A stretch of DNA of 64,000 bases from Mobula birostris (Eukaryota), in contig NC_092382.1 of NCBI RefSeq assembly GCF_030028105.1, positions 100,890,699 through 100,954,698 on the forward strand, given 5' to 3'. Below are positions 2,165 through 63,223 of this stretch, piece after piece. Under the pieces are notes generated by a model, which was not told the DNA's origin, made no database searches, and saw only the letters and a list, made by a program, of their open reading frames with translations. A program made the position numbers and the translations under genes. The stretch's first letter is position 1. Each line of letters opens with the position of its first letter.

Positions 2165-2955
2165 GCAGTCAAAGAAACATAGAAACGTAGAATACCTACA
2201 GCACAATACAGGCCCTTCGGCCCACAAAGCTGTGCCGAACATGTCCTTACCTTAGAAATTACTTCTATTTTAGCCCTCTATTTTCTGAGCTCCACGTACC
2301 TGTTCGGGGGTCTCTTAAAAGTCCCTATCGTTTCCGCCTCCACCACCGCTGCTGGCAGCCCATTCCATGCACTCACCGCTCTCTAAGTAAAAAACTTACC
2401 CCTGACATCTCCTCTGTACCTACTCCCCAGCACCTTAAACCTGTGCCTTCTCGTGTTAGCCATTTCAGCCGTGGGGAAAAGCCTCTGACTATCCACACGA
2501 TCAATGTCTCTCATCACCTTATACACCTCTATCAGGTCACCTCTCATCCTCCGTCACTCAAAGGAGAAAAGACCGAGTCCACTCAACCCATTCTCCTAAG
2601 GCATGCTCCCCAATCCAGGCAACATCCTTGTAAATATCCTCTGCACCCTTTCTATGGTTTCCACATCCTTCCTGTAGTGAGGCGACCAGAACTGAGCACA
2701 GTACTCCAAGTGGGGTCTGACCAGGGTCCTATATACCTGCAACATTACCTACCAGTTCTTAAACTCAATCCCACGGTTGATGAAGGCCAATGTACCGCAT
2801 GCCTTCTTAACCACAGAGCCGACCTGCTTAGCAGCTTTGAGTGTCCTATGGACTCGGACCTCAAGATCCCCCTGATCCTCCACACTGCCTAGAGCCTTAC
2901 CATTAATAGTATATTCTGCCATCATATTTGACCTACCAAAATGAACCACCTCGCA
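2165..2955 (-). mobile_element. CR1-clade LINE 3' fragment
   Basis: Minus-strand RT C-terminal remnant (GSVEDQGDLEVRVHRTLK..AFINRGIEF) and the acatagaa..ctacagcacaatacaggccc 3' end shared with other copies. Confidence 0.85.
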
Positions 2956-3040
2956 CATAGAAGCATAAAAACATTGAAAACCTACAGCATAATACAGGCC
3001 ACACACATCAAAGTTGCTGTTGAACGCAGACTGGGACGGG

Positions 3041-3076
3041 AGTCCTGACGAAGGGTCTCGGCCTGAAACGTCGACT
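3041..3076 (+). ncRNA. Minimal type I hammerhead ribozyme motif, copy 1
   Basis: AGTC-CTGACGA-AGG(GTCTCGG)CCT-GAAAC-GTC-GACT: stem I AGTC/GACT, core CUGANGA and GAAA, GUC triplet, palindromic ACGT helix III. Confidence 0.75.
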
Positions 3077-3095
3077 GTACCTCTTTCTAGAGATG

Positions 3096-3131
3096 AGTCC
3101 TGACGAAGGGTCATGGCCTGAAACGTTGACT
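3096..3131 (+). ncRNA. Minimal type I hammerhead ribozyme motif, copy 2
   Basis: AGTC-CTGACGA-AGG(GTCATGG)CCT-GAAAC-GTT-GACT, with a GUU triplet. Confidence 0.65.
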
Positions 3132-4045
3132 GTACCTCTTCCTAGAGATGCTGCCTGGCCTACTGCATTCACCAGCAACTTTGATGTGTGTTGCTTGAAT
3201 TTCCAGCATGAATTCCTGTTGTTTGCATAATACAGGCCGTTCATCCCACAAAGTTGTGACGAACATTCCCTACCTTAGAAATTGCTAGGCTTACCTATAG
3301 CCCTCTATATTTCTAAGCTCCATGTACCTATCTAAAAGTCTCTTAAAAGACCCTGCCGTATCCATCTCCACCACCGACGCCGGCAGCCCATTCCATCCAC
3401 TCACCACTCTCTGCGTAAAAAATTTACCCCTGACATCTCCTCTGTACCTACTTACAAACACCTTAAAACTGTGCCCTCTCGTGCTAGCGATTTCAGCCCT
3501 GGGAAAAAGCTTCTAACTATCCACACGATCAATGCCTCTCATCATCTTATACACCTCTATCAGGTCACCTCTCATCCTCCGTCGCTCCAAGGCGAAAAGG
3601 CCGAGTTCAACTTAAACTATTCTCATCAGGCATGCTCTCCAATCCAGGCAACATCCTTGTAAATCTCCTCTGCAACCTTTCTATGGCTTCCAAATCCTTC
3701 CTGTGGTGAGGCGACCAGAACTGAGCACAGTACTCCAAGTGGGGTCTGACCAGGGTCCTATATACATGCAACATTATCTCTTGGCTCTTAACCTCAATCC
3801 CACAATTGATGAAGCACAATACACCGTATGCTATCTTAACCACATATGGACGGATGCATAAACAAGCCGGGAATGTAGGAACATGGACCGTAACCAGATG
3901 GGTTCTGTTTAATTGATATCATTTCCTGCACTGTCTGGTTCCATTTTGTACGTTCCTCTGCGGTGAACTACGCGATCTGTAAGTGCGACGTCATCGCAGC
4001 AGTGAACGTCATTTCCCATTCTCCCCCGTCATAGTCGACAGTAGA

Positions 4046-4084
4046 GGATTTTGCCGCGTCGACCCATTTCTCTGAGACACTGTG
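4046..4084 (-). other. 23-RSS of V2
   Basis: CACAGTG-23-GCAAAATCC. Confidence 0.9.
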
Positions 4085-4604
4085 TCGACTCCAGGCGCAG
4101 AGGTACACGGCCGAGTGAATCGCCCTGAGTTCGTCGGTTCTCAGAATGAAGGTCTTCTCCTCAGGCCTCTTGGCGATGAATCCTTCGATAGGTTTGTGCG
4201 GAGTGACTGTGTCCTTTAACCCGGAGTAGAACAGGTTCTGTGGAGCCTCTCCCGGGTATTGACGGTACCAGTACATGTCAGGATTGTTGCTACCACCGGA
4301 CAAGTCGCATTTGAGCTCGACAGGTTGCCCGGGTAGAGCGGAAACGGCGGGCGGTGTCTGAACGATCGTCCAAGAATTCACTTCTAGTGGAGAGAGGTGG
4401 ACAGGGTGATGATGGAGAGCCGGGGACTAAGGCGATAGCATTATTGATGCACGGGGAAAGCACATTTAGGTAGAAGCATAATTATGCAGTATGTATGATC
4501 TGATGAGATTAATTTATCAAACATAGAATGTTTTGAATTGCTATCCAGGTTTACTTACCCGGGCAGTGGAGAATGAAACCCAGTAAAACGCCGAGGATTC
4601 TCAT
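4085..4604 (-). CDS. TRBV: V2, family A TCR V segment, apparently functional
   Basis: Leader 4604-4559 MRILGVLLGFILHCP + GTAAGT; V exon 4383-4085 EVNSWTIVQTPPAVSALPGQPVELKC..MYWYRQYPG..SAVYLCAWSR is open, with both Cys and the Trp intact. Confidence 0.9.
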
Positions 4605-6110: not shown

Positions 6111-7344
6111 TTCTGATCCGTTTTTGAGGATCGGTACAGGAGGGGTGACCACAGCTTTGATCGATAGTCTTCAGAGACTTTCTGTCTGTCGTCAGCGGTC
6201 GGATAACCAGAACGTGTGTTCTGCGTACGACCATCCAGCAGCTGCCCCGCTTTCCTCCATGGCTTCACGTGACCCTGATCGGGGGAGGGTGGCTCCGCCG
6301 CTGCCGCATCTTGCCCAACGGTGACCTGCGGGCTGGCAGAGGGAAGGAGCGCCTTACCGCTGCCTTGGTGGAGACGGATCTCCAACCGCCGCCCAGGTTG
6401 GAGATAAAGCTCTCCAGGCAAGACGGCGCCCGATCTCGCATTTCACTCCCTTCCTGTCATGGGACGAACCGAAAAGCGAGCATTTCTCTTTCTCGGGCGT
6501 GGACACGGATAGGAATTCATGCAGATGCGACACGATCTCCAGACCTGTGATGCCTCTGGGCCTGCGCCCCCTGGCGGTCCGAAGGCTGAGGAGGGGTTCG
6601 CATTGAAACCTGCCGAATATCGGAAGTTCAGATAGAGCGGACGGTGACAGGAAATTTCGTACGGTGGGGGAGTCCAGGAGCAGAGTTCCCGGTTGTTGAT
6701 TAGACGTACGTCCATTTGGAACAGAGACAGGCAGGAATTACTGAAGCCGAGCGTGGGGAATCTGCGGAAGCCCTAATCACAGCCGGCTGCGGAGGTCACC
6801 TCATTGTCCATGTTTTAAGCGGAGTTCAACAGGGCGTGAATTGGTAATGACATGAAAGGGTGCGACAAGAAGCTGGAGAATAGGGCTGAGAGGGTTAATA
6901 AATCAGCCACGAAGGAATGACGGTGCAGACGTGATCAGCCGATCGGCCTATTTCATCCAATGTCACCTCCTCGTATTAATAATAACACGCAAACACGGTT
7001 TGAGCCGAAATGCTTGTTTCGATGTTGCATTGCTCTCCGAAGGAGGCTTCTCACCTACCTTTCTTCTTTACCAGGTATGCTAGCGGGCGGGTTGGTCCTT
7101 CCTCAGATGTTATCGGGTCTGCTGCGCATTTTCGAGCGCATCCCGGTTTTAGGGTCATAGGGAACGGGAACATTTGAACAGCCTATCGGGACTGTGCCGG
7201 GTTATTGTTCTGGCTAGTCCCGTCGAACTGGACCACAGGCTACCAACCACCCGTCCCCTCCCATCCCTGTAAAAATCCAGCCTTCCAAGGGCACGTTTCT
7301 GAAACGCGCTGACAGTGGTAGAGCTGGCGGGTGTGATAAGAGAC

Positions 7345-27403: not shown

Positions 27404-29187
27404 CCTCTCTCCGGAATCCCTCTCTGTGTTGTGCGAGGCAGCGACTGGGGAGAAACGCGTCGTCTATGCGCCGCCCCCTCCGGGCAATTTGCTGCCTGCA
27501 GTCACCGTCTGGTGTGGAGGGGCCAATCGGCAGTATCGGAAAATGCTGAAGAGGTGGGTCTCTGCTCGAAATATCGATTGTCTGTTCATTTCCATATCCG
27601 CGCCCTGACCTGCTCAGTTCCTACAACATTTGATGTTTGTTGTTGCGGATTTCCGACATCAGCAGAGATGCCGGTGTTTAGACAGCAGTAAACTCAATCA
27701 GCTCCATCAGCAGCAATAGCCTCTCCAGCATGGAGGGCATCTTCAATGGGCGAACCCCCAACAAGGCAGCATCCATCACTAGCGAACCAAACACCAACGA
27801 CATGCCCTCTACGCAGTACTGCCATCGAGTGGGAGGTACAGCGGAGAAAACTTGTAAATGTAGGGCGATATAGTTCATCTCGGGCTGGCGTTCCATCGTT
27901 ATGTTTTACGCCCTTGGCCAATTCCGTGAAGCAAGAGGTCCGTGACCTGGGTCTAGGATTAATATTGCTGATTAGGGACTTGTCTGGGCTGATCTGCATA
28001 TCCAAATCCAGGAGCAGAACTGTTCAGTCAGTCCGGACTTTAAAACAAAGAGTTGAAACATGATGTTGCACTTATTTAAGTCGTTGATGTGTCTTTTTGT
28101 TACCTCTTTAGGAAAACGAGATTAATGACCAGAGAGTGCAGGGGAGATGTCGCATGCACTCAGGGTCCGCATTTCCCGGAAGACGACAGCATCCTGGAAA
28201 TGAGGAGCTTCCATATAGAAATTCTTATCCTTTTGTCACAATGTTATGGGAAAACGGGATTGAACTAGAGAGAGAGCAGAAAATAGATTGTCCGGACCCT
28301 CAGTTACACGGACACGTATGCAGGCTGGGTCCTTTTCCCTTGACGTCTCATAGAGTGACTGGTGACTGGACAGAAATGGGTCATAATTACGAGCGGCGCA
28401 GCGCAGATCAGGTTGACGAGGGCAGTCTTACTTTTTCTGCAGTGTCGAGGACTCCGAAGTTGGAGGGAGTGTCAGAGGTACAGGGTGAAAGGGCAAACAT
28501 TTAAAAGTGACCCGACACGACTGTAGAGAATGATTTTCCATAGAGAGAGTTGGAGGCAGTGCACGGATAACTTTGAGTAACCACTTCGATAGGTACATGG
28601 AGGAGAGGGACATTGAAAGCAGGAAATTGCGATCTGCGAGATAGACACGTGGTCGGTACTGCACTGCACTTTGACCCTGGGGGCGACGTTCAGAGATCAG
28701 CATTCATTTGTTTGATCCCTCCGGTCAGCAGAGGGCGCTACATCACCATCCGCCAACCAATGAAGCTGAACCATCGCTTCTAAAAGGGGAATCCGATTTT
28801 CTGTTTATCCAGAGAGTTCCTCTCCCTCCGCATATCACGTCCTTCTGCTCACAATATCGCAGTCCGTCTAGATCACGTCTAAAAATCGCCAAACCTCATC
28901 AGCATTTAGAGATTCACACAGCACTGCAGCGGTGCCTGTACCTCAGCAAAGCGGCTTCCGTCACTCGGGGCCCGTCCTCTTCACCTTATCAACATCGCAG
29001 AGAGGTACAGGAGCTTGAAGACGCAGATTGAAATATTCAGGAAAAGAATTTGCCCCTCTATTATCTGATTTCTGAAGGGTATATGAACGCAGAACACCCT
29101 GTCACTGTTCCGAATTTGGAAACAGGATTGATATTCTATCTTTCTATATCTCGCTGCCTCCCTCTCTCTCTCTATGTAACAATCTAA

Positions 29188-35613: not shown

Positions 35614-35819
35614 CCTCTCTCCGGAATCCCTCTCTGTGTTGTGAGAGGCAGCGACTGGGGAGAAAACGCCGCATCAGGGCCGCGCCCCTTCCGGGCACAT
35701 TGCTGCCTGCGTCACCAATCCGGAACACGGGAAATGCGGAAGGAGGTGGGTCAAAGACTCAAACGACATTTCCTTATCTACGCCCAGACCTGCTGAGTTC
35801 TTACAACAATGTGTGTGCG

Positions 35820-37329: not shown

Positions 37330-38473
37330 ATGCTGCAGTTTCTCCAGTTGATAATCTGGCTTCACGGTAAAATGTCGACCTCGTTTAATAATTCCACAAC
37401 CTATTATCTATCGTTTTCGTTCGATCTCCACCCTCATTTTTTTCATCTCCCTTTCTATATGCCGTTCCTATTTTTTATCCACTGTTGTGTTTTTGCCCTA
37501 TTGTATTTCAATCATCAAACATGTTTTGTTGTTTTCTTCCCTTCCTTATCCACTTGACGTATTCATCCCTTTCCATTCTCTGTCTGTACCCATCTGCCCT
37601 TTTCTCCCTTTCCCTTTCTCCCTTTCTCACTCTCCCTTTCTCCCATACTCTTCTTCCCTTTCTCTGTCTTTCTATCTCATTTTCGCGATTTATCTGGGCA
37701 ATATTTTATCTCTGTATCTTCGTCTTCATCTGCTCTTCTTAGTTCTCTGACTCTCTTCCCCTCTTGACCTGACATTTCTCTGCCTTTGTCCAATTCTTAT
37801 TACAAATCTCCCTTTCAAATTTAACTCTGCCCCTCTCTCGTTCTGTCTCTCTCTCACATTATCTCTCTCTCTTCCCCCCCCTCTCTCCCTCTCTCTCTCT
37901 CTCTCGCTCTCTCAACCTGATTCCCCCTGTCAGTCTAATCACTCTACCTATCGTATTGTCTGTCTTCAGGACCTAGTGCTTTTGTTTCACAGATATCCAA
38001 CCATCCTTCAATTTACTGACCGTTCCCATATATCTCTTCCGCTCTCCACCTATTTCGCCTCTCCACGCGGTCGGTCTATCCCCACACTCCAGCCGCTCCT
38101 CGCTCCTCGGTTTTCCCGAATCTTCTCCCGTTCTGTAGATTATTGACCTTCCCTTCTCCCCGTCTCAGTTCCAGGTGTGAACCCGCAGGCCATCGTTCAG
38201 ACTCCTCCGGCCCTCACCGAGCATCCCGGGGAAAGTGTGACTTTGAGGTGCGTCAGAAAGGGTAGCAGCAGCAGTAACGCCTTCTACTGGTACAGACAAT
38301 ACCCGGGGAAGGAGATTCACAACCTCTTTTACTCCAGGGCTGTCAACACCGTCTATCCTCAGGGGGCCGTGGACGGATTCACCGCCAGGAGACCGGGTGC
38401 CGAGACGTTCATTCTAACCTCTCCCGGCCTGCTGCCGAACCACTCGGCCGTCTACCTCTGCGGGTGGAGTCTT
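37330..38473 (+). CDS. TRBV: V12, family B TCR V segment, apparently functional
   Basis: Leader 37330-37366 MLQFLQLIIWLH; V exon 38175-38473 open: GVNPQAIVQTPP..LRC..FYWYRQYPG..SAVYLCGWSL. Confidence 0.88.
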
Positions 38474-38512
38474 CACAGCGACTCGGGGACACAGCGGCGC
38501 TCAACATAAACC
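38474..38512 (+). other. 23-RSS of V12 (two variant positions)
   Basis: CACAGCG-23-ACATAAACC. Confidence 0.88.
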
Positions 38513-38749
38513 TTCTAACGTGACAGGAAACAGCTGGCGGTGGGTTTGGCCAGGAATAAGCATTTACTGTTTTCGCTATCTCTCTCTCGTACTTTCTCTC
38601 TTTTTTCTTTCTCGCTCTCACCTTTCCCTACTCTTCCCTCTCTTCCCGAGTTTCCTCTCCGCGGGTTGCAGTCTTACCCAAACTCAGTGGATAAGGCCTG
38701 TTTGTATTTACACTAAATACTCTGTAGACGTTGTGATCAAAGCAACACT

Positions 38750-39650
38750 TTCAGTACGCTGGATGAACTCAGCAGGTCGGGCAGCATCAGTCACAAATGA
38801 TGAGTCGACGTTTCGGGCCGCAACCCTTCGTCAGGACTGAAGAATGAAAGATGGGGAAGGATTTGAAGAATGCTTGTAGCTTCAGTTGAAAGACCAGCAA
38901 CTTGAAAGACAAAGGGGTGGGGGCGGGGAAGCATTGACGTCGTAGTCCTGAAAACAATGGGTAGTAGAAGAAGGAGGCGGAAACATGTGGAAGCTAGGGG
39001 ACGGCTAGAGTTAAATAGACACAGAGGAAGGGAAGGGGAGGGAATTACCGAAATTTGGAGAATTCTATGTTCATACAAATGGGCTGGAGACTACCTAGAC
39101 AGTTAATGAGGTGCTGCTCCTCCAACCTGAGTTTAACCTCATGGCAGTAGAGGAGGCCATGTATGGCATATCTGAATGGGAATGGGAAACTTTGTTGAAG
39201 TGGGTGGCTACCGGGAGCTCCTGTCGGTTGTGGCGGACTGAGTGGAGGTGCTTGACGAAGCGGTCCCCCAATCTGCGTCGGGTTTCACCGATGTAGAGGA
39301 GGCCGCACCGGGAGCACTGGATGCAATAGATGACCCCAACAGACTCACAAGTGAAGTGTTGCCTCACCTGGAAGGACTGTTTGGGGCCCTGAATGGTGGC
39401 AAGAGAGGAGGTGTAGGGACAGGTGTAGCACTTGCACTTACAGGGATAATTGCCGGTTGGGAGATCCGTGGGGAGGGTCGTGTGGACCAGGGAGTCGCGG
39501 AGGGACCGATCCCTGCGGAAGGCGGAGAGGGGTGGAGAAAGAAAGATGTGCTTGGTGGTGGGGTCCTGTTGAAGGTGGCGGAAGTTGCGGAGGATAATGT
39601 GCTGGATCCGCAGGCTGGTGGGGACAAGGGGAACTCTGTCCCTGTTGTGG
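38750..39650 (-). mobile_element. Penelope-like element 3' fragment with GIY-YIG endonuclease remnant
   Basis: HFTCESVGVIYCIQCSRCGLLYIGETRRRLGDRFVKH..PVATHFN (ORF 39095-39367), preceded by a Cys-rich linker and followed by pLTR-type sequence. Confidence 0.88.
38803..38838 (-). ncRNA. Minimal type I hammerhead ribozyme motif in the PLE pLTR
   Basis: Minus strand AGTC-CTGACGA-A-GGG(TTGCGG)CCC-GAAAC-GTC-GACT. Confidence 0.75.
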
Positions 39651-41096
39651 TTGCGGGCTTTTCAGGCAGCACTGCTCTCTGCATAATGAAACTTGCCCCG
39701 CACATCTTGGACAAGAACTGTTCGGAAGGGAAGCAGCCGCTTCCCCAAGGCCATATGACTACTGAACTCTCTGCCGCCACCAAGGTCTCATCACGCATGA
39801 AGCGTCAGTAGCGTTGCATCGTTTACTATCTTACGTCGTGTTGTCAATGAGCCTCTGTCGTATCTGCCTTCAACACCATTACCACCCCTCGCAACAAATT
39901 CCAGCCTCCCACCACACTCTGTGTTGAAAATGCGAACAATTTGCCCCGAAAAATTCATTTGATCACATCGTCATTGTAAGAAAATGTTCATATTTTATTG
40001 GCTTTATTGAGGGAAACAGCACGGTAGCAGGCCTCCCGGCTCATGTTATCAGTCCCACCCACCCGCACGTCTTTAAAATGTAGGAAGCTGTGTGAATGTG
40101 TGATTAAACAGGAGGACGCCCAAGAGGTTACCTGGAGAGTGTGCAAACTCCTTCCAGACAGCCGCGGAACTGAATCGGAGAGCAGAAACAGCGTCTCGTT
40201 CACCGTAACGCCACTCCACCGTGCCGGCACTTTCCACCCTCCACTCCCATGTGAGAATACGTTTCTCCAGATCACTGTCCCGTCAGCTAGCAAGAGCTCC
40301 ATTAGTGGTCTGTCTCCATCCAGGCAGCATCCTCGTCAATCTCCCTCTCTCTCAGCTCAGTGGCATCTTTCGCTACAGCGGGGCGTCCAAACATTAACAC
40401 TGTACTCCAAGTGCGAACTCACCGAAGTCTTGTACAATTATAACATAACCTCCCGCCTGACGTACTCAGTGTCCTGACTGACGAGGATCTGCGTGTAAAC
40501 GCCTTCCTCGTCGCCCCGTCTACATGTGACTCCACCTTCCATGAACCTTTTATCTCCTCTCCATGGTCCGTCTGTTCCACAACACTACCCAGTTCTCCAA
40601 CATTCACGTTGAAAATCATATCCTATTCTAACTTCCCAAAATTTCTGCCCGTTTCGCCAGCTTCCCTTGTTTTGTCCGGCCCTGTAATTGATTTTCACTT
40701 TGATCAAACCGTCTCAGTCAGTCTTTGTAACGTACGAATGTTTGCGATTATGCGGGAAAACCAGAGGGAGACCGCGTGGTCACGGCGGAAATGAATGCGA
40801 GCGCTATAATATCGTCACGTTGCCCGCTGCGCTCCTTTACCGTGCTGCCCGGACGCTTCACCACTCCCATGTGAGGATCCGTTTCCTCAATTCACTGTCT
40901 CCTCATCTGGCAACAGCTCGATAGGTCGTTTTCATCCTCGCCCCTCGAGTTAATCTGGAACGATACCACTGCTTCTCAGTATCACCGGCAGACTTGCTAA
41001 TGATGCCTTGCACGTGTTTTTCAAGAATCTTGTGCGTGTTCAGTGCAATTCAGATCAATGGTTCTCAGATATCACCTGCTTCCTGTCGCCGGCGAA

Positions 41097-41135
41097 GGTT
41101 TTTGTCGGGTCCCGGCGTGTCTCTGAGCCACTGTG
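41097..41135 (-). other. Perfect 23-RSS of V13
   Basis: CACAGTG-23-ACAAAAACC. Confidence 0.95.
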
Positions 41136-42049
41136 AGTACTCCAGGCGCAGTAGTAGACAGCCGACTGGTCCGGGCGCAGGCTGGTGGAGTTGAGAATGA
41201 ACGTGTTTGCGTCGCGTCTCCGGGCGATGAAGCCGTCCACAGCCCCCTCCGGAAAAACCGTGGTACCCGTGGAGTGAAACAGGTACTGAATCTCCCTGCC
41301 CGGATACTGTCGGTACCAGTAGAGATAATTGCTAGCGCTACCGCCGTCCAGGATGCATTCCAGCTCCACGCTCTCGCCGGGAGATTTGGAGAGAGCCGGC
41401 GTGTCCTGGCGAACGGACTGCGACGTCCCACCTGAGGAAGTGAACGGGAAGAGAAATGAGTTAAATGTACCGGAAGACCAAAGTAGGTGGGATGTTTTGT
41501 TAAAGAGGAGGGCGGGATGTCGGGAAAAACGAACGTCACTGAGGGATATGGAATGGACACTCGTTCATACCGACACTGTTTACCGCCGAGCTCGTTCCAT
41601 CTTCGGGTGTCCGGTCAAAAGACCTGTAAACCTCTCTAATCCAAGATTTCATGTGTAAGCAGATGCAGTTTATACTTCCCCAATATGTCCGCCGGTATTT
41701 CAGGAACCTGCTTCGATAGGAGTCATCATCCGCTGATATCCGCTATAATTAGTCCTCTCCTATAATAAACCCGTTCCGTCACGTTTCAAGTACCCGTTCC
41801 CCTCCCGCTTTAACTCCATCCCTTATCTTCGGCTACCCCGGAATGAAATCCTAGTCGAAGGAACCTCTCCTTCTACCTCGGGCCACGCAGATACTGGCAA
41901 AATTTTGCGAAAACTTCCCCGCACTCGTTCTAGTTTAACATCTTTCCAATAGCAAAGTGGCCGAACCTAGTTAAGTATTAAAGATTAATTATTGAGTTAG
42001 ATTGTTTCTTACGTTGAAGCAACGGCGCCAGGGCGATTAAGAGCAACAT
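41136..42049 (-). CDS. TRBV: V13, family C TCR V segment, apparently functional
   Basis: Leader 42049-42013 MLLLIALAPLLQ + GTAAGA; V exon 41431-41136 (296 nt, CDR2 one codon shorter) open to SAVYYCAWST. Confidence 0.9.
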
Positions 42050-50127: not shown

Positions 50128-50623
50128 CCTCTCTCCGGAATCCCGCTCTGTGTTGTGCGAGGGAGCGACTGGGGAAAAGCCCCGCCCATTCCGGGCATAT
50201 TGCCGGCTGCGGTCACCGTCTGATGTGGCGGGGCCAATCCGCGGTATGAAGAGGTGGGACTCGGCCCGAAACGTCGACGATATGTTCGCTTCCATATCTG
50301 CGCCCTGACCCGCTCGGTTCCCGCAGCACTTCCATCATTTGCAGACTTCCACGTGTTTCGAGCGTGATAAACTTCACCTAATCCATCAACAACTGCAGCT
50401 TCCCCAGCATCGAAGACAGCTTCAACAGGCGGACCTCAGTAAGGAAGCATCCAGCATCGACGACCCCCGCCGCCTAGGACGGGTCTCTTCTCATTACTAT
50501 CATCAAGGAGGAGGTACAGGGGTCTGAAGACACATATTCATCGATTCAGGAACAACTTCTTCCCCTGCTTTCCGATTGGCGCTTGAACCCATGAACACTA
50601 TCCCGTTAGTTTGCACTACATTG

Positions 50624-52601: not shown

Positions 52602-52919
52602 CCTCTCTCCGGAATCCCTCTCTGTGTTGTGCGAGGTGGCGACTGGGGAGAAACGCCTCGTCTATGCCCCGCCCCATCCGGGCAAATTGCCGCCTGCAGT
52701 CACCGTCTGGTGTGGAGGGGCCAATCGGCAGTATCGGAAAATGCTGAAGAGGTGGGTGTCTGCAGGAAACGTCAACTGTCTGTTCATTTCCATGTCCGCG
52801 CTCAGACCTTCTCATATTATGTGTGTTGATTCAGATTTTCAGCATCAGCAGTTTCCGGTGTTTAGACAGTGGTGAACGCAATCAGCTCCGTCATCAACAA
52901 TAGCCTCTCCAGCATCGAG

Positions 52920-62722: not shown

Positions 62723-63223
62723 AGAAACAATGTAGTGCAAACAAACGAGGTGGTGTTCATGGGTTCAAGCGCCAATCGGAAAGCAGGGGAAGAAGTTGTT
62801 CCTGAATCGATGAAAATGTGTCTTCAGACCCCTGTACCTCCTCCTTGATGAGAGTAATGAGAAGAGACCCGTCCTAGGCGGCGGGGGTCGTCGATGCTGG
62901 ATGCTTCCTTACTGAGGTCCGCCTGTTGAAGCTGTCTTCGATGCTGGGGAAGCTGCAGTTGTTGATGGATTCGGTGAAGTTTATCACGCTCGAAACACGT
63001 GGAAGTCTGCAAATGATGGAAATGCTGCTGGAACCGAGCGGTTCAGGGCGCAGATATGGAAACGAACATATCGGCGACGTTTCGGGCCGAGTCCCACTTC
63101 TTCATACCGCGGACTGGCCCCGCCACACCAGACGGTGACCGCAGCCGGCAATATGGCCGGAATGGGCGGGGCTTTTCCCCAGTCGCTACCTCGCACAACA
63201 CAGAGCGGGATTCCGGAGAGAGG

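What the first reader, a model, noticed from the sequence alone, without database searches (positions are those of the whole stretch)
3001..3224. 224-bp TSD-flanked mini-element with tandem minimal hammerhead ribozymes (retrozyme-like)
Seen: the insert sits inside a CR1 3' end, bounded by a perfect 14-bp direct repeat (2987-3000 / 3225-3238). It has a 19-bp internal inverted repeat (3001-3019 / 3173-3191), no ORF, and two hammerhead cores 55 nt apart (3041-3076, 3096-3131), each with stem I AGTC/GACT, CUGACGA, a 3-bp stem II, GAAAC and a GUC or GUU triplet. Established: Penelope-like elements carry minimal type I hammerheads with a palindromic helix III that cleave as dimers. Inference: the tandem pair could form a double hammerhead in cis, and this may be a non-autonomous ribozyme-bearing retroelement mobilised by the PLE family seen at 38750-39650.
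Basis: partly seen in the sequence, partly recalled or inferred. Interest (0 to 1): 0.75.

Follow-up and report, generated by a model that had tools for sequence, protein, structure and literature searches.

The report
Short fold-back Penelope retrotransposon stub
The 224-base insert is real and carries two minimal hammerhead motifs, but it is an ordinary by-product of an extremely abundant Penelope-like retrotransposon, not a new ribozyme-carrying mobile element.

Summary
Three other copies of the host repeat in the window carry the 14-mer once, which proves an insertion.

The right arm (3041-3224) is the 3' end of a Penelope-like element (PLE) family that is hugely abundant in two organisms' sequencing runs. 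In that family one hammerhead is the norm. The 5' junction at 3030-3039 is almost unique.

The left arm (3001-3029) is an inverted copy of the PLE tail region and lacks the last 33 nt. The literature describes exactly this for PLE insertions: an inverted 5'-truncated copy next to the main copy, and a 30-40-bp tail at one end only. The purified PLE enzyme cuts and extends both DNA strands from two internal start sites.

The 55-nt hammerhead duplication is the only unusual detail, and its origin is unresolved. Cleavage could not be tested and looks unfavourable.

The scan has noted such fold-back stubs many times on other DNA of this genome. Verdict: already known, low interest.

The parts
2987..3000 (.). 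Left copy of the 14-bp target-site duplication
   Evidence: Identical to 3225-3238. Three paralogs of the host repeat carry it once.
3001..3029 (-). Inverted stub: reverse complement of 3163-3191 of the PLE terminal region. It starts 33 nt short of the family's 3' end, so it has no tail.
   Evidence: 27/29 match. At one of the two mismatches the left arm keeps the family's majority letter (G at the place of 3167). At the other (the place of 3172) the right arm keeps it.
3030..3040 (.). 11-nt junction filler of unknown origin between the two arms
   Evidence: 3/11 match to the continuation of the inverted repeat. It does not resemble the spacer before unit 2. Depth is about 200-700 against millions next door.
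3041..3076 (+). Minimal type I hammerhead motif 1 (GUC, predicted cut after 3072)
   Evidence: All core letters are present. The 10.1-11.1 pair is G.U.
3077..3095 (+). Spacer 1 with a 4-bp hairpin (3081-3084 / 3089-3092)
3096..3131 (+). Minimal type I hammerhead motif 2 (GUU, predicted cut after 3127)
   Evidence: The family majority at 3127 is C, so GUU is a CpG-to-TpG change.
3132..3191 (+). Spacer 2 and PLE terminal region shared with the family
   Evidence: Aligns with the PLE 3' end at 38.8 kb and with older stubs. Word depth is 5-12 million (organism A) and 11-22 million (organism B).
3192..3224 (+). 33-nt tail, present on the right arm only. It ends at the family's 3' terminus (...GTTT).
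   Evidence: The family's end is read from loose ends at 3209. Older stubs end the same way. A 30-40-bp tail at one end only is described in PMC8557442.
3225..3238 (.). Right copy of the target-site duplication
38700..39650 (-). 5'-truncated PLE copy of a diverged subfamily, with a GIY-YIG endonuclease region and one hammerhead (38803-38838)
   Evidence: Pfam GIY-YIG, E = 5.5e-4, just under the curated cut-off. 33 homologous protein fragments, the best at 64% identity. Hammerhead pattern. 3' end aligned to the insert.

Best explanation
One retrotransposition event of an abundant Penelope-like element left a heavily 5'-truncated, fold-back stub.

Inferred course of events:
- The element's GIY-YIG endonuclease nicked both strands of a host repeat 14 bp apart.
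- The minus-strand 3' end primed reverse transcription at the outer start site (3224). It copied the tail, the terminal region, the spacer and the hammerhead, 184-195 nt in all depending on how the unassigned 11 nt at 3030-3040 are counted.
- The plus-strand 3' end primed a second cDNA at the inner start site, 33 nt further in (the equivalent of 3191), and copied only 29 nt.
- The two cDNAs were joined through 11 nt of filler, and repair duplicated the 14-bp target.

Shown: the anatomy, the duplicated target, colinearity with PLE 3' ends, and the rarity of the 5' junction. Inferred: the order of events and the use of two start sites.

The 55-nt reiteration of hammerhead plus spacer either came with the source RNA or arose by a template switch at the 5' edge of the hammerhead. 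The insert has no coding capacity and no shared 5' end, so it is a dead-on-arrival copy. Its hammerheads are passengers, not a means of mobility.
For: - TSD and empty-site paralogs.
- The right arm is homologous to the 3' end of the GIY-YIG-bearing PLE copy and to an older stub set in the window. All end at the same ...GTTT terminus but start at three different 5' points.
- In runs of two organisms the hammerhead and tail reach word depths of 6-26 million, while 3033-3038 has about 200-700. Depth dips 10-20-fold at 3088-3119. Many contigs join about 3085 to about 3141, so they carry a single hammerhead.
- The left arm equals the reverse complement of 3163-3191 and lacks the 33-nt tail.
- Published PLE traits: an inverted 5'-truncated copy adjacent at the 5' end, and a 30-40-bp tail often at one end only (PMC8557442). 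The purified PLE protein cleaves and extends both strands and starts reverse transcription at two internal sites that bracket the tail (PMC11167929). Dual minimal hammerheads on opposite strands 100-700 bp apart are reported (PMC4209133). Tandem minimal hammerheads occur in axolotl PLEs (PMC7229834).
- One of the two arm differences and two of the four unit differences are CpG decay, and at two of these three (3127, 3167) the family majority was read and sides with the partner copy. This is compatible with duplicates that were identical at insertion.
Against: - No full-length source element with two hammerheads 55 nt apart was recovered, so the origin of the duplication is open.
- Contigs laid on unit 2 appear to carry its own loop letters (no other letters listed at 3113-3114). 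This hints that the two units may come from two pre-existing variants rather than from one template.
- First-reader notes on other windows of this genome mention at least two more tandem-hammerhead elements (s1-145665, s1-145859), so a small tandem subfamily is not excluded.
- Contigs cannot show read ends, and the one raw-read run laid nothing.
- The runs may not include the source individual. The best holder has 0.46 of the words.
Confidence: 0.8

Rival explanations
1. The insert belongs to a distinct non-autonomous, retrozyme-like family with fixed inverted ends and two tandem hammerheads. PLE enzymes would mobilise it in trans, possibly through a self-cleaved or circular RNA.
For: - It meets the operational rule of Li et al. 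2026: a tandem repeat found by TRF with two consecutive complete hammerhead units, each with a monomer fold below -5 kcal/mol.
- A nested double hammerhead can be drawn.
- Unchecked scan notes report other tandem-hammerhead, inverted-end elements in this genome.
- The preprint derives animal retrozymes from PLE terminal repeats.
Against: - The 5' junction is nearly unique and the junction between units is strongly under-represented in the family.
- The other noted fold-back elements have different lengths (233, 324, 905 bp) and TSD lengths of 10-14 bp, as expected for variable truncation.
- The unit is 55 nt, against 150-450 nt for described retrozymes, and it lacks loop-loop contacts.
- The hammerhead fold is 18 kcal/mol worse than a competing rod.
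Confidence: 0.1
2. The composite arose in several steps at the DNA level: a plain PLE stub was inserted first, then a local 55-bp tandem duplication and a small inverted duplication occurred at its 5' edge by replication or repair errors.
For: The duplication junction has only 1 nt of overlap (G at 3040, 3095 and 3150), which fits repair-type events. The four unit differences and two arm differences show the locus is not very young.
Against: A single TSD pair brackets the whole composite. The inverted piece copies a distant part of the tail and begins exactly one tail-length (33 nt) inside the 3' end, which PLE integration predicts and random repair does not.
Confidence: 0.07

Closest known systems
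5'-truncated Penelope-like element insertions with an adjacent inverted 5'-truncated copy and a one-sided 30-40-bp tail (Evgen'ev & Arkhipova 2005; Craig et al. 2021, PMC8557442; Frangieh et al. 2024, PMC11167929)
   Same: TSD, 3' end colinear with the PLE family, extreme 5' truncation, an inverted stub at the 5' side, and a 33-nt tail on one arm only. The hammerhead lies in the terminal region.
   Different: Very short, with no ORF left. The inverted arm is only 29 nt. There is an extra 55-nt reiteration of hammerhead plus spacer.
Minimal PLE hammerhead ribozymes that act as dimers (Cervera & de la Pena 2014, PMC4209133; Lunse et al. 2017, cited in PMC6765202)
   Same: Type I order, a 4-bp helix I, a bulged base before helix II, and no helix III loop but a palindromic ACGU. 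Two copies lie close together.
   Different: The pair next to the core is G.U instead of the conserved G10.1-C11.1, both in these two units and in at least 95% of the laid family depth. Helix II has only 4 pairs. The second unit has GUU.
Animal non-LTR retrozymes (Cervera & de la Pena 2020, PMC7229834; Li, Clavereau & Pollet 2026 preprint)
   Same: Tandem units that each hold a type I hammerhead, a link to PLE terminal repeats, and TSDs longer than 4 bp.
   Different: Only two units of 55 nt. Minimal rather than canonical hammerheads. No sign of a family sharing this unit arrangement. No circular RNA evidence.

Membership tests
Penelope-like element insertion (truncated copy) | 3' part colinear with the 3' end of an RT/GIY-YIG element, down to a shared 3' terminus | tested here: met
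   Alignments A1 and A3. GIY-YIG hit on the neighbouring-type copy. The family's 3' end is read from loose ends.
Penelope-like element insertion (truncated copy) | Target-site duplication of variable length | tested here: met
   14/14 bp, and paralogs carry it once.
Penelope-like element insertion (truncated copy) | Inverted 5'-truncated copy adjacent at the 5' end, with the 30-40-bp tail at one end only | tested here: met
   29-nt inverted arm lacking the 33-nt tail. The trait is described in PMC8557442.
Penelope-like element insertion (truncated copy) | RT and GIY-YIG ORF | tested here: not met
   No coding part is left in 3001-3224. This is expected for an extreme 5' truncation and does not argue against origin from a PLE.
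PLE minimal hammerhead (Cervera & de la Pena 2014) | Core CUGANGA ... GAAA, H17, and a palindromic 15.2-16.2 without loop 3 | tested here: met
   Both units.
PLE minimal hammerhead (Cervera & de la Pena 2014) | Unpaired base between positions 9 and 10.1 | tested here: met
   A at 3052 and 3107.
PLE minimal hammerhead (Cervera & de la Pena 2014) | Conserved G10.1-C11.1 pair | tested here: not met
   G.U in both units. No other letter reaches 5% at 3064 or 3119 in the laid family. The diverged PLE copy at 38.8 kb and the old stub at 50.2 kb have C.
PLE minimal hammerhead (Cervera & de la Pena 2014) | Self-cleavage, as a dimer | not testable with these tools
   Only folding energies are available: the double hammerhead is -13.3 kcal/mol against a minimum of -31.4.
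Animal non-LTR retrozyme (Cervera & de la Pena 2020) | Tandem monomers of about 150-450 bp, from dimers to long arrays, many copies per genome | tested here: not met
   Two units of 55 nt. The junction between units is under-represented in the family.
Animal non-LTR retrozyme (Cervera & de la Pena 2020) | Canonical type I hammerhead with loop 1-loop 2 contacts | tested here: not met
   Minimal motif with a 4-bp open helix I. No Rfam hammerhead hit even at E = 10.
Animal non-LTR retrozyme (Cervera & de la Pena 2020) | Expressed as small circular RNAs | not testable with these tools
   The one possible RNA run is held as contigs and its RNA label is a guess.
Non-LTR retrozyme, operational rule of Li et al. 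2026 | TRF tandem repeat with at least two consecutive units, each with a complete hammerhead and a fold below -5 kcal/mol | tested here: met
   TRF score 194, period 55, 2.0 copies. Monomers fold at -10.0 and -8.4 kcal/mol. Rule quoted. The rule does not separate PLE stubs from independent elements.

The most novel reading that the evidence does not exclude
Both the start of the direct arm (3040/3041) and the duplication breakpoint (3095/3096) lie at the 5' edge of the hammerhead. An earlier agent reported that stubs of this family tend to begin at that edge, and family contigs diverge there. If the PLE reverse transcriptase regularly ends or switches template at that edge, this locus would catch the step that turns a single PLE hammerhead tail into a tandem hammerhead unit. 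That step would be the birth of an animal retrozyme from a PLE.
Probability: 0.1. Interest if true: 0.5.

Novelty: already known. Interest (0 to 1): 0.18.

Why it matters
It matters little in itself, because this is one more dead copy of a very abundant retrotransposon.

It is a clean in-vivo example of what the 2024 in-vitro work on a PLE enzyme predicts: both DNA strands are extended, from two start sites one tail-length apart.

It also shows that a purely operational retrozyme definition (two tandem hammerhead units) will count PLE stubs as active retrozymes.

The dominant subfamily carries G.U at the 10.1-11.1 pair. This fits the report that hammerhead catalysis is not needed for PLE insertion.

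Tried and rejected
- Rfam at gathering and at E = 10: no hammerhead family matched. This says the minimal motif is outside the curated models, not that it is absent.
- Exact-pattern scans for the hammerhead in metagenome contigs (two scans) and viral contigs (one scan) found nothing, so no extra copies could be fetched.
The PLE homologs found could therefore not be placed on DNA to see a full-length element's terminal repeat.
- The raw-read run X21 laid no reads, so there is no read-level evidence on ends, cleavage or copy number. The possible RNA run X15 is contigs only and may be DNA.
- Lunse et al. 2017 is not held in the library.
- Snap-back self-priming was rejected as the source of the inverted repeat, because the inverted piece copies a region 133 nt away rather than the adjacent 5' end.
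- Classical L1-type twin priming on one RNA was rejected as the sole model, because the inverted piece duplicates sequence that is also present in the direct arm.
- The extension of the inverted repeat into 3030-3040 was rejected (3/11 matches).
- The weak hammerhead-like hits at 6586 and 52744 were set aside. The first is at chance level. In the second, the CTGAAGAG part appears to belong to the sequence flanking an old stub.

Full report
**Observation.**
The 14-mer at 2987-3000 recurs exactly at 3225-3238, and the match does not extend on either side.

The host sequence is a dispersed repeat. Three further copies in the window (near 2208, 10442 and 14910) carry this 14-mer region once and continue directly into the sequence that follows 3238 here. 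So 3001-3224 is an insertion with a duplicated target.

Two 55-nt units (3040-3094 and 3095-3149) are 51/55 identical. Tandem Repeats Finder gives period 55, 2.0 copies and score 194.

Each unit holds the elements of a minimal type I hammerhead in this order:
- AGUC
- CUGACGA
- a bulged A
- a 4-pair helix II
- GAAAC
- GUC or GUU
- GACU

A core pattern occurs 3 times in the window against 0 expected. The third site is at 38804-38834 on the minus strand. Rfam reports no hammerhead, even at E = 10.

3001-3029 is the reverse complement of 3163-3191 at 27/29. The next 11 nt match only 3/11.

**What the right arm is.**
The segment from the hammerhead to 3224 aligns with the 3' end of the 5'-truncated element at about 38.7-39.65 kb (minus strand). 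The ORF of that element has a GIY-YIG match (E = 5.5e-4, slightly under Pfam's cut-off). It also has 33 homologous protein fragments in the large protein collection, the best at 64% identity.

The right arm also aligns with an older set of paralogous stubs at 27.5, 35.7, 50.2 and 52.7 kb (aligned). A further probable paralog on the minus strand near 63.1 kb is known only from pattern hits. The aligned stubs begin inside helix II. Three of the four end at the same ...GTTT terminus. In the copy at 35.7 kb the tail is replaced by a (TG)n run.

The window therefore holds three independent insertions with three different 5' ends and one shared 3' end. That is the pattern of a 5'-truncating retrotransposon.

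**Abundance and shape of the family.**
Contigs of two organisms' runs were laid on 2880-3350 at 85% likeness.
- Word depth is 6-26 million over 3040-3087 and 3120-3199.
- Depth at 3033-3038 is only about 200-700.
- Depth is 10-20-fold lower over 3088-3119, the junction between the two units.
- Many contigs join about 3085 to about 3141, skipping 55-60 nt.
- Contigs that leave the stretch after 3078 read a spacer followed by the same GATGCTGCC... sequence that here follows unit 2.

So the normal family member has one hammerhead, and the 5' junction of this insert is close to unique. The family's 3' end, read from loose ends at 3209, matches the end of the insert apart from a small deletion.

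Depth here is summed contig word depth, not copy number. The runs may not include the source individual, because the best holder has only 0.46 of the sampled words.

**What the left arm is.**
The 29-nt inverted piece copies the PLE terminal region but stops 33 nt short of the 3' terminus. The last 33 nt (3192-3224) are therefore present on one arm only.

The literature describes this pattern for PLE insertions:
- Craig et al. [quoted passage not shown]
- Frangieh et al. 2024 showed that a purified PLE protein cleaves and extends both DNA strands. Reverse transcription starts at two internal sites, and the tail is the sequence between them (PMC11167929).
- Cervera and de la Pena 2014 already noted dual minimal hammerheads 100-700 bp apart on opposite strands (PMC4209133).

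The geometry fits this model. The plus-strand 3' end of the target (...CAGGCC at 3000) is followed directly by cDNA-sense sequence. The minus-strand 3' end at the other TSD copy is followed by cDNA of the full tail.

I infer one event with two primed cDNAs, joined through 11 nt of filler. The order of events is an inference, not an observation.

**Age.**
The two arms differ at 2 of 29 positions and the two units at 4 of 55.
- 3127 is T here. The family majority is C, and unit 1 has C at the matching place. This is a CpG-to-TpG change.
- 3167 is A here. The family majority is G, and the left arm keeps G. This is also CpG decay.
- At the place of 3172 the family has C, and the left arm carries the derived letter.

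These differences are compatible with duplicates that were identical at insertion and decayed afterwards. At that level of divergence a perfect 14-bp TSD is not surprising.

One point cuts the other way. Contigs laid on unit 2 show no alternative letters at its two loop positions (3113-3114). That loop variant may therefore pre-exist in the family, and the two units may stem from different variants.

**The 55-nt duplication.**
This is the only feature that standard PLE anatomy does not predict, and its origin is unresolved. Three readings remain:
- It was inherited from a source copy. Tandem minimal hammerheads in PLEs are reported for axolotl (PMC7229834), and unchecked scan notes mention others in this genome.
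- It arose by a template switch during this event.
- It arose by a later DNA-level duplication.

Both the duplication breakpoint (3095/3096) and the start of the direct arm (3040/3041) lie at the 5' edge of the hammerhead. Family contigs also leave the stretch there, with heterogeneous upstream sequence: 830 contigs with loose ends before 3041 and consensus agreement of 0.38. An earlier agent reported the same clustering on other DNA (s1-145545). My data cannot separate true insertion starts from variable 3' UTRs.

**Ribozyme competence.**
A double hammerhead in cis is a fully nested structure, and all 24 pairs are canonical:
- helix I of one ribozyme is 3041-3044 with 3128-3131
- helix I of the other is 3073-3076 with 3096-3099, closed by the spacer
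- a shared 4-bp helix III is formed by ACGU with ACGU

Its nearest-neighbour energy is -13.3 kcal/mol. A rod in which the two units pair with each other reaches -31.4. Each monomer prefers an off-state in which GACG of the core pairs with CGUC.

The pair beside the core is G.U rather than the conserved G10.1-C11.1, both in these two units and in at least 95% of the family depth laid. Unit 2 has GUU.

Published PLE hammerheads cleave poorly even as dimers (PMC4209133). One is protein-assisted and dispensable for insertion in vitro (PMC11167929). I rate unaided cleavage of this RNA as unlikely, but it was not tested.

**Comparison with retrozymes.**
By the criteria of Cervera and de la Pena 2020 this is not a retrozyme. 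Those criteria are 150-450-nt monomers, canonical hammerheads with loop contacts, many copies and circular RNAs.

By the operational rule of Li et al. 2026 it would be counted as an active retrozyme dimer. That rule asks for a TRF repeat with two consecutive complete hammerhead units, each folding below -5 kcal/mol. The same preprint derives retrozymes from PLE terminal repeats, so the overlap is one of definition, not of biology.

**Limits.**
- No genome-wide search was possible.
- Public metagenome and viral collections held no copy.
- The raw-read run laid nothing, and the possible RNA run is contigs only.

**Verdict.**
The kind is already known and the interest is low.

The scan has noted this kind of fold-back or hammerhead-headed stub many times on other DNA of the same genome. 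Two earlier follow-ups reached the same reading (s1-145545, s1-145291).

Noticed in passing
window 27540-27680, 35730-35810, 50245-50358, 52743-52862 (+), and about 62950-63140 (-): Four aligned copies, plus a probable fifth near 63.1 kb known from pattern hits only, of an older PLE stub. The aligned copies start inside helix II of the hammerhead. Three of them end at ...GTGTTT; at 35.7 kb a (TG)n run replaces the tail. The upstream flank recurs at four of the five sites; the downstream flank was matched at two and seen by eye at a third. The flanks read like the C-terminal part of a LINE ORF (my reading, not tested). The set therefore looks like one old insertion multiplied by segmental duplication of the V-gene cassettes. 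The CTGAAGAG upstream of it looks like target sequence, not hammerhead core.
   Followed up: partly
window 3968-4381 (-), also 38177-38509 (+) and 41055-41369 (-): Immunoglobulin V-set ORFs, with Pfam V-set E = 1e-12 for the first. They carry the YWYRQ and YxC motifs of T-cell-receptor V segments. The window is a V-gene cluster, in line with an earlier scan note of TRBV-like segments in a probable cartilaginous fish.
   Followed up: partly
window 2701-2956 and 3700-3845: The same repeat sequence occurs twice. The left copy breaks off at 2956, where the family consensus from the runs continues differently. The host repeat of the insert begins at 2957 with CATAGAA-like octamers. Read on the minus strand, these resemble a CR1-type 3' end. 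No RT ORF was found nearby.
   Followed up: partly
window 38690-38712 (-): The DNA just beyond the 3' end of the PLE copy at 38.8 kb (AATACAAACAGGCC...) resembles the target of the 224-bp insert (AATACAGGCC...). This may be chance, or the element may prefer this spot of the host repeat.
   Followed up: no
window 3064 and 3119, compared with 38813 and 50264: The abundant young subfamily has U at hammerhead position 11.1 (a G.U pair). The diverged PLE copy and the old stub at 50.2 kb have the canonical C. The most successful subfamily therefore seems to have spread with a weakened core pair.
   Followed up: partly
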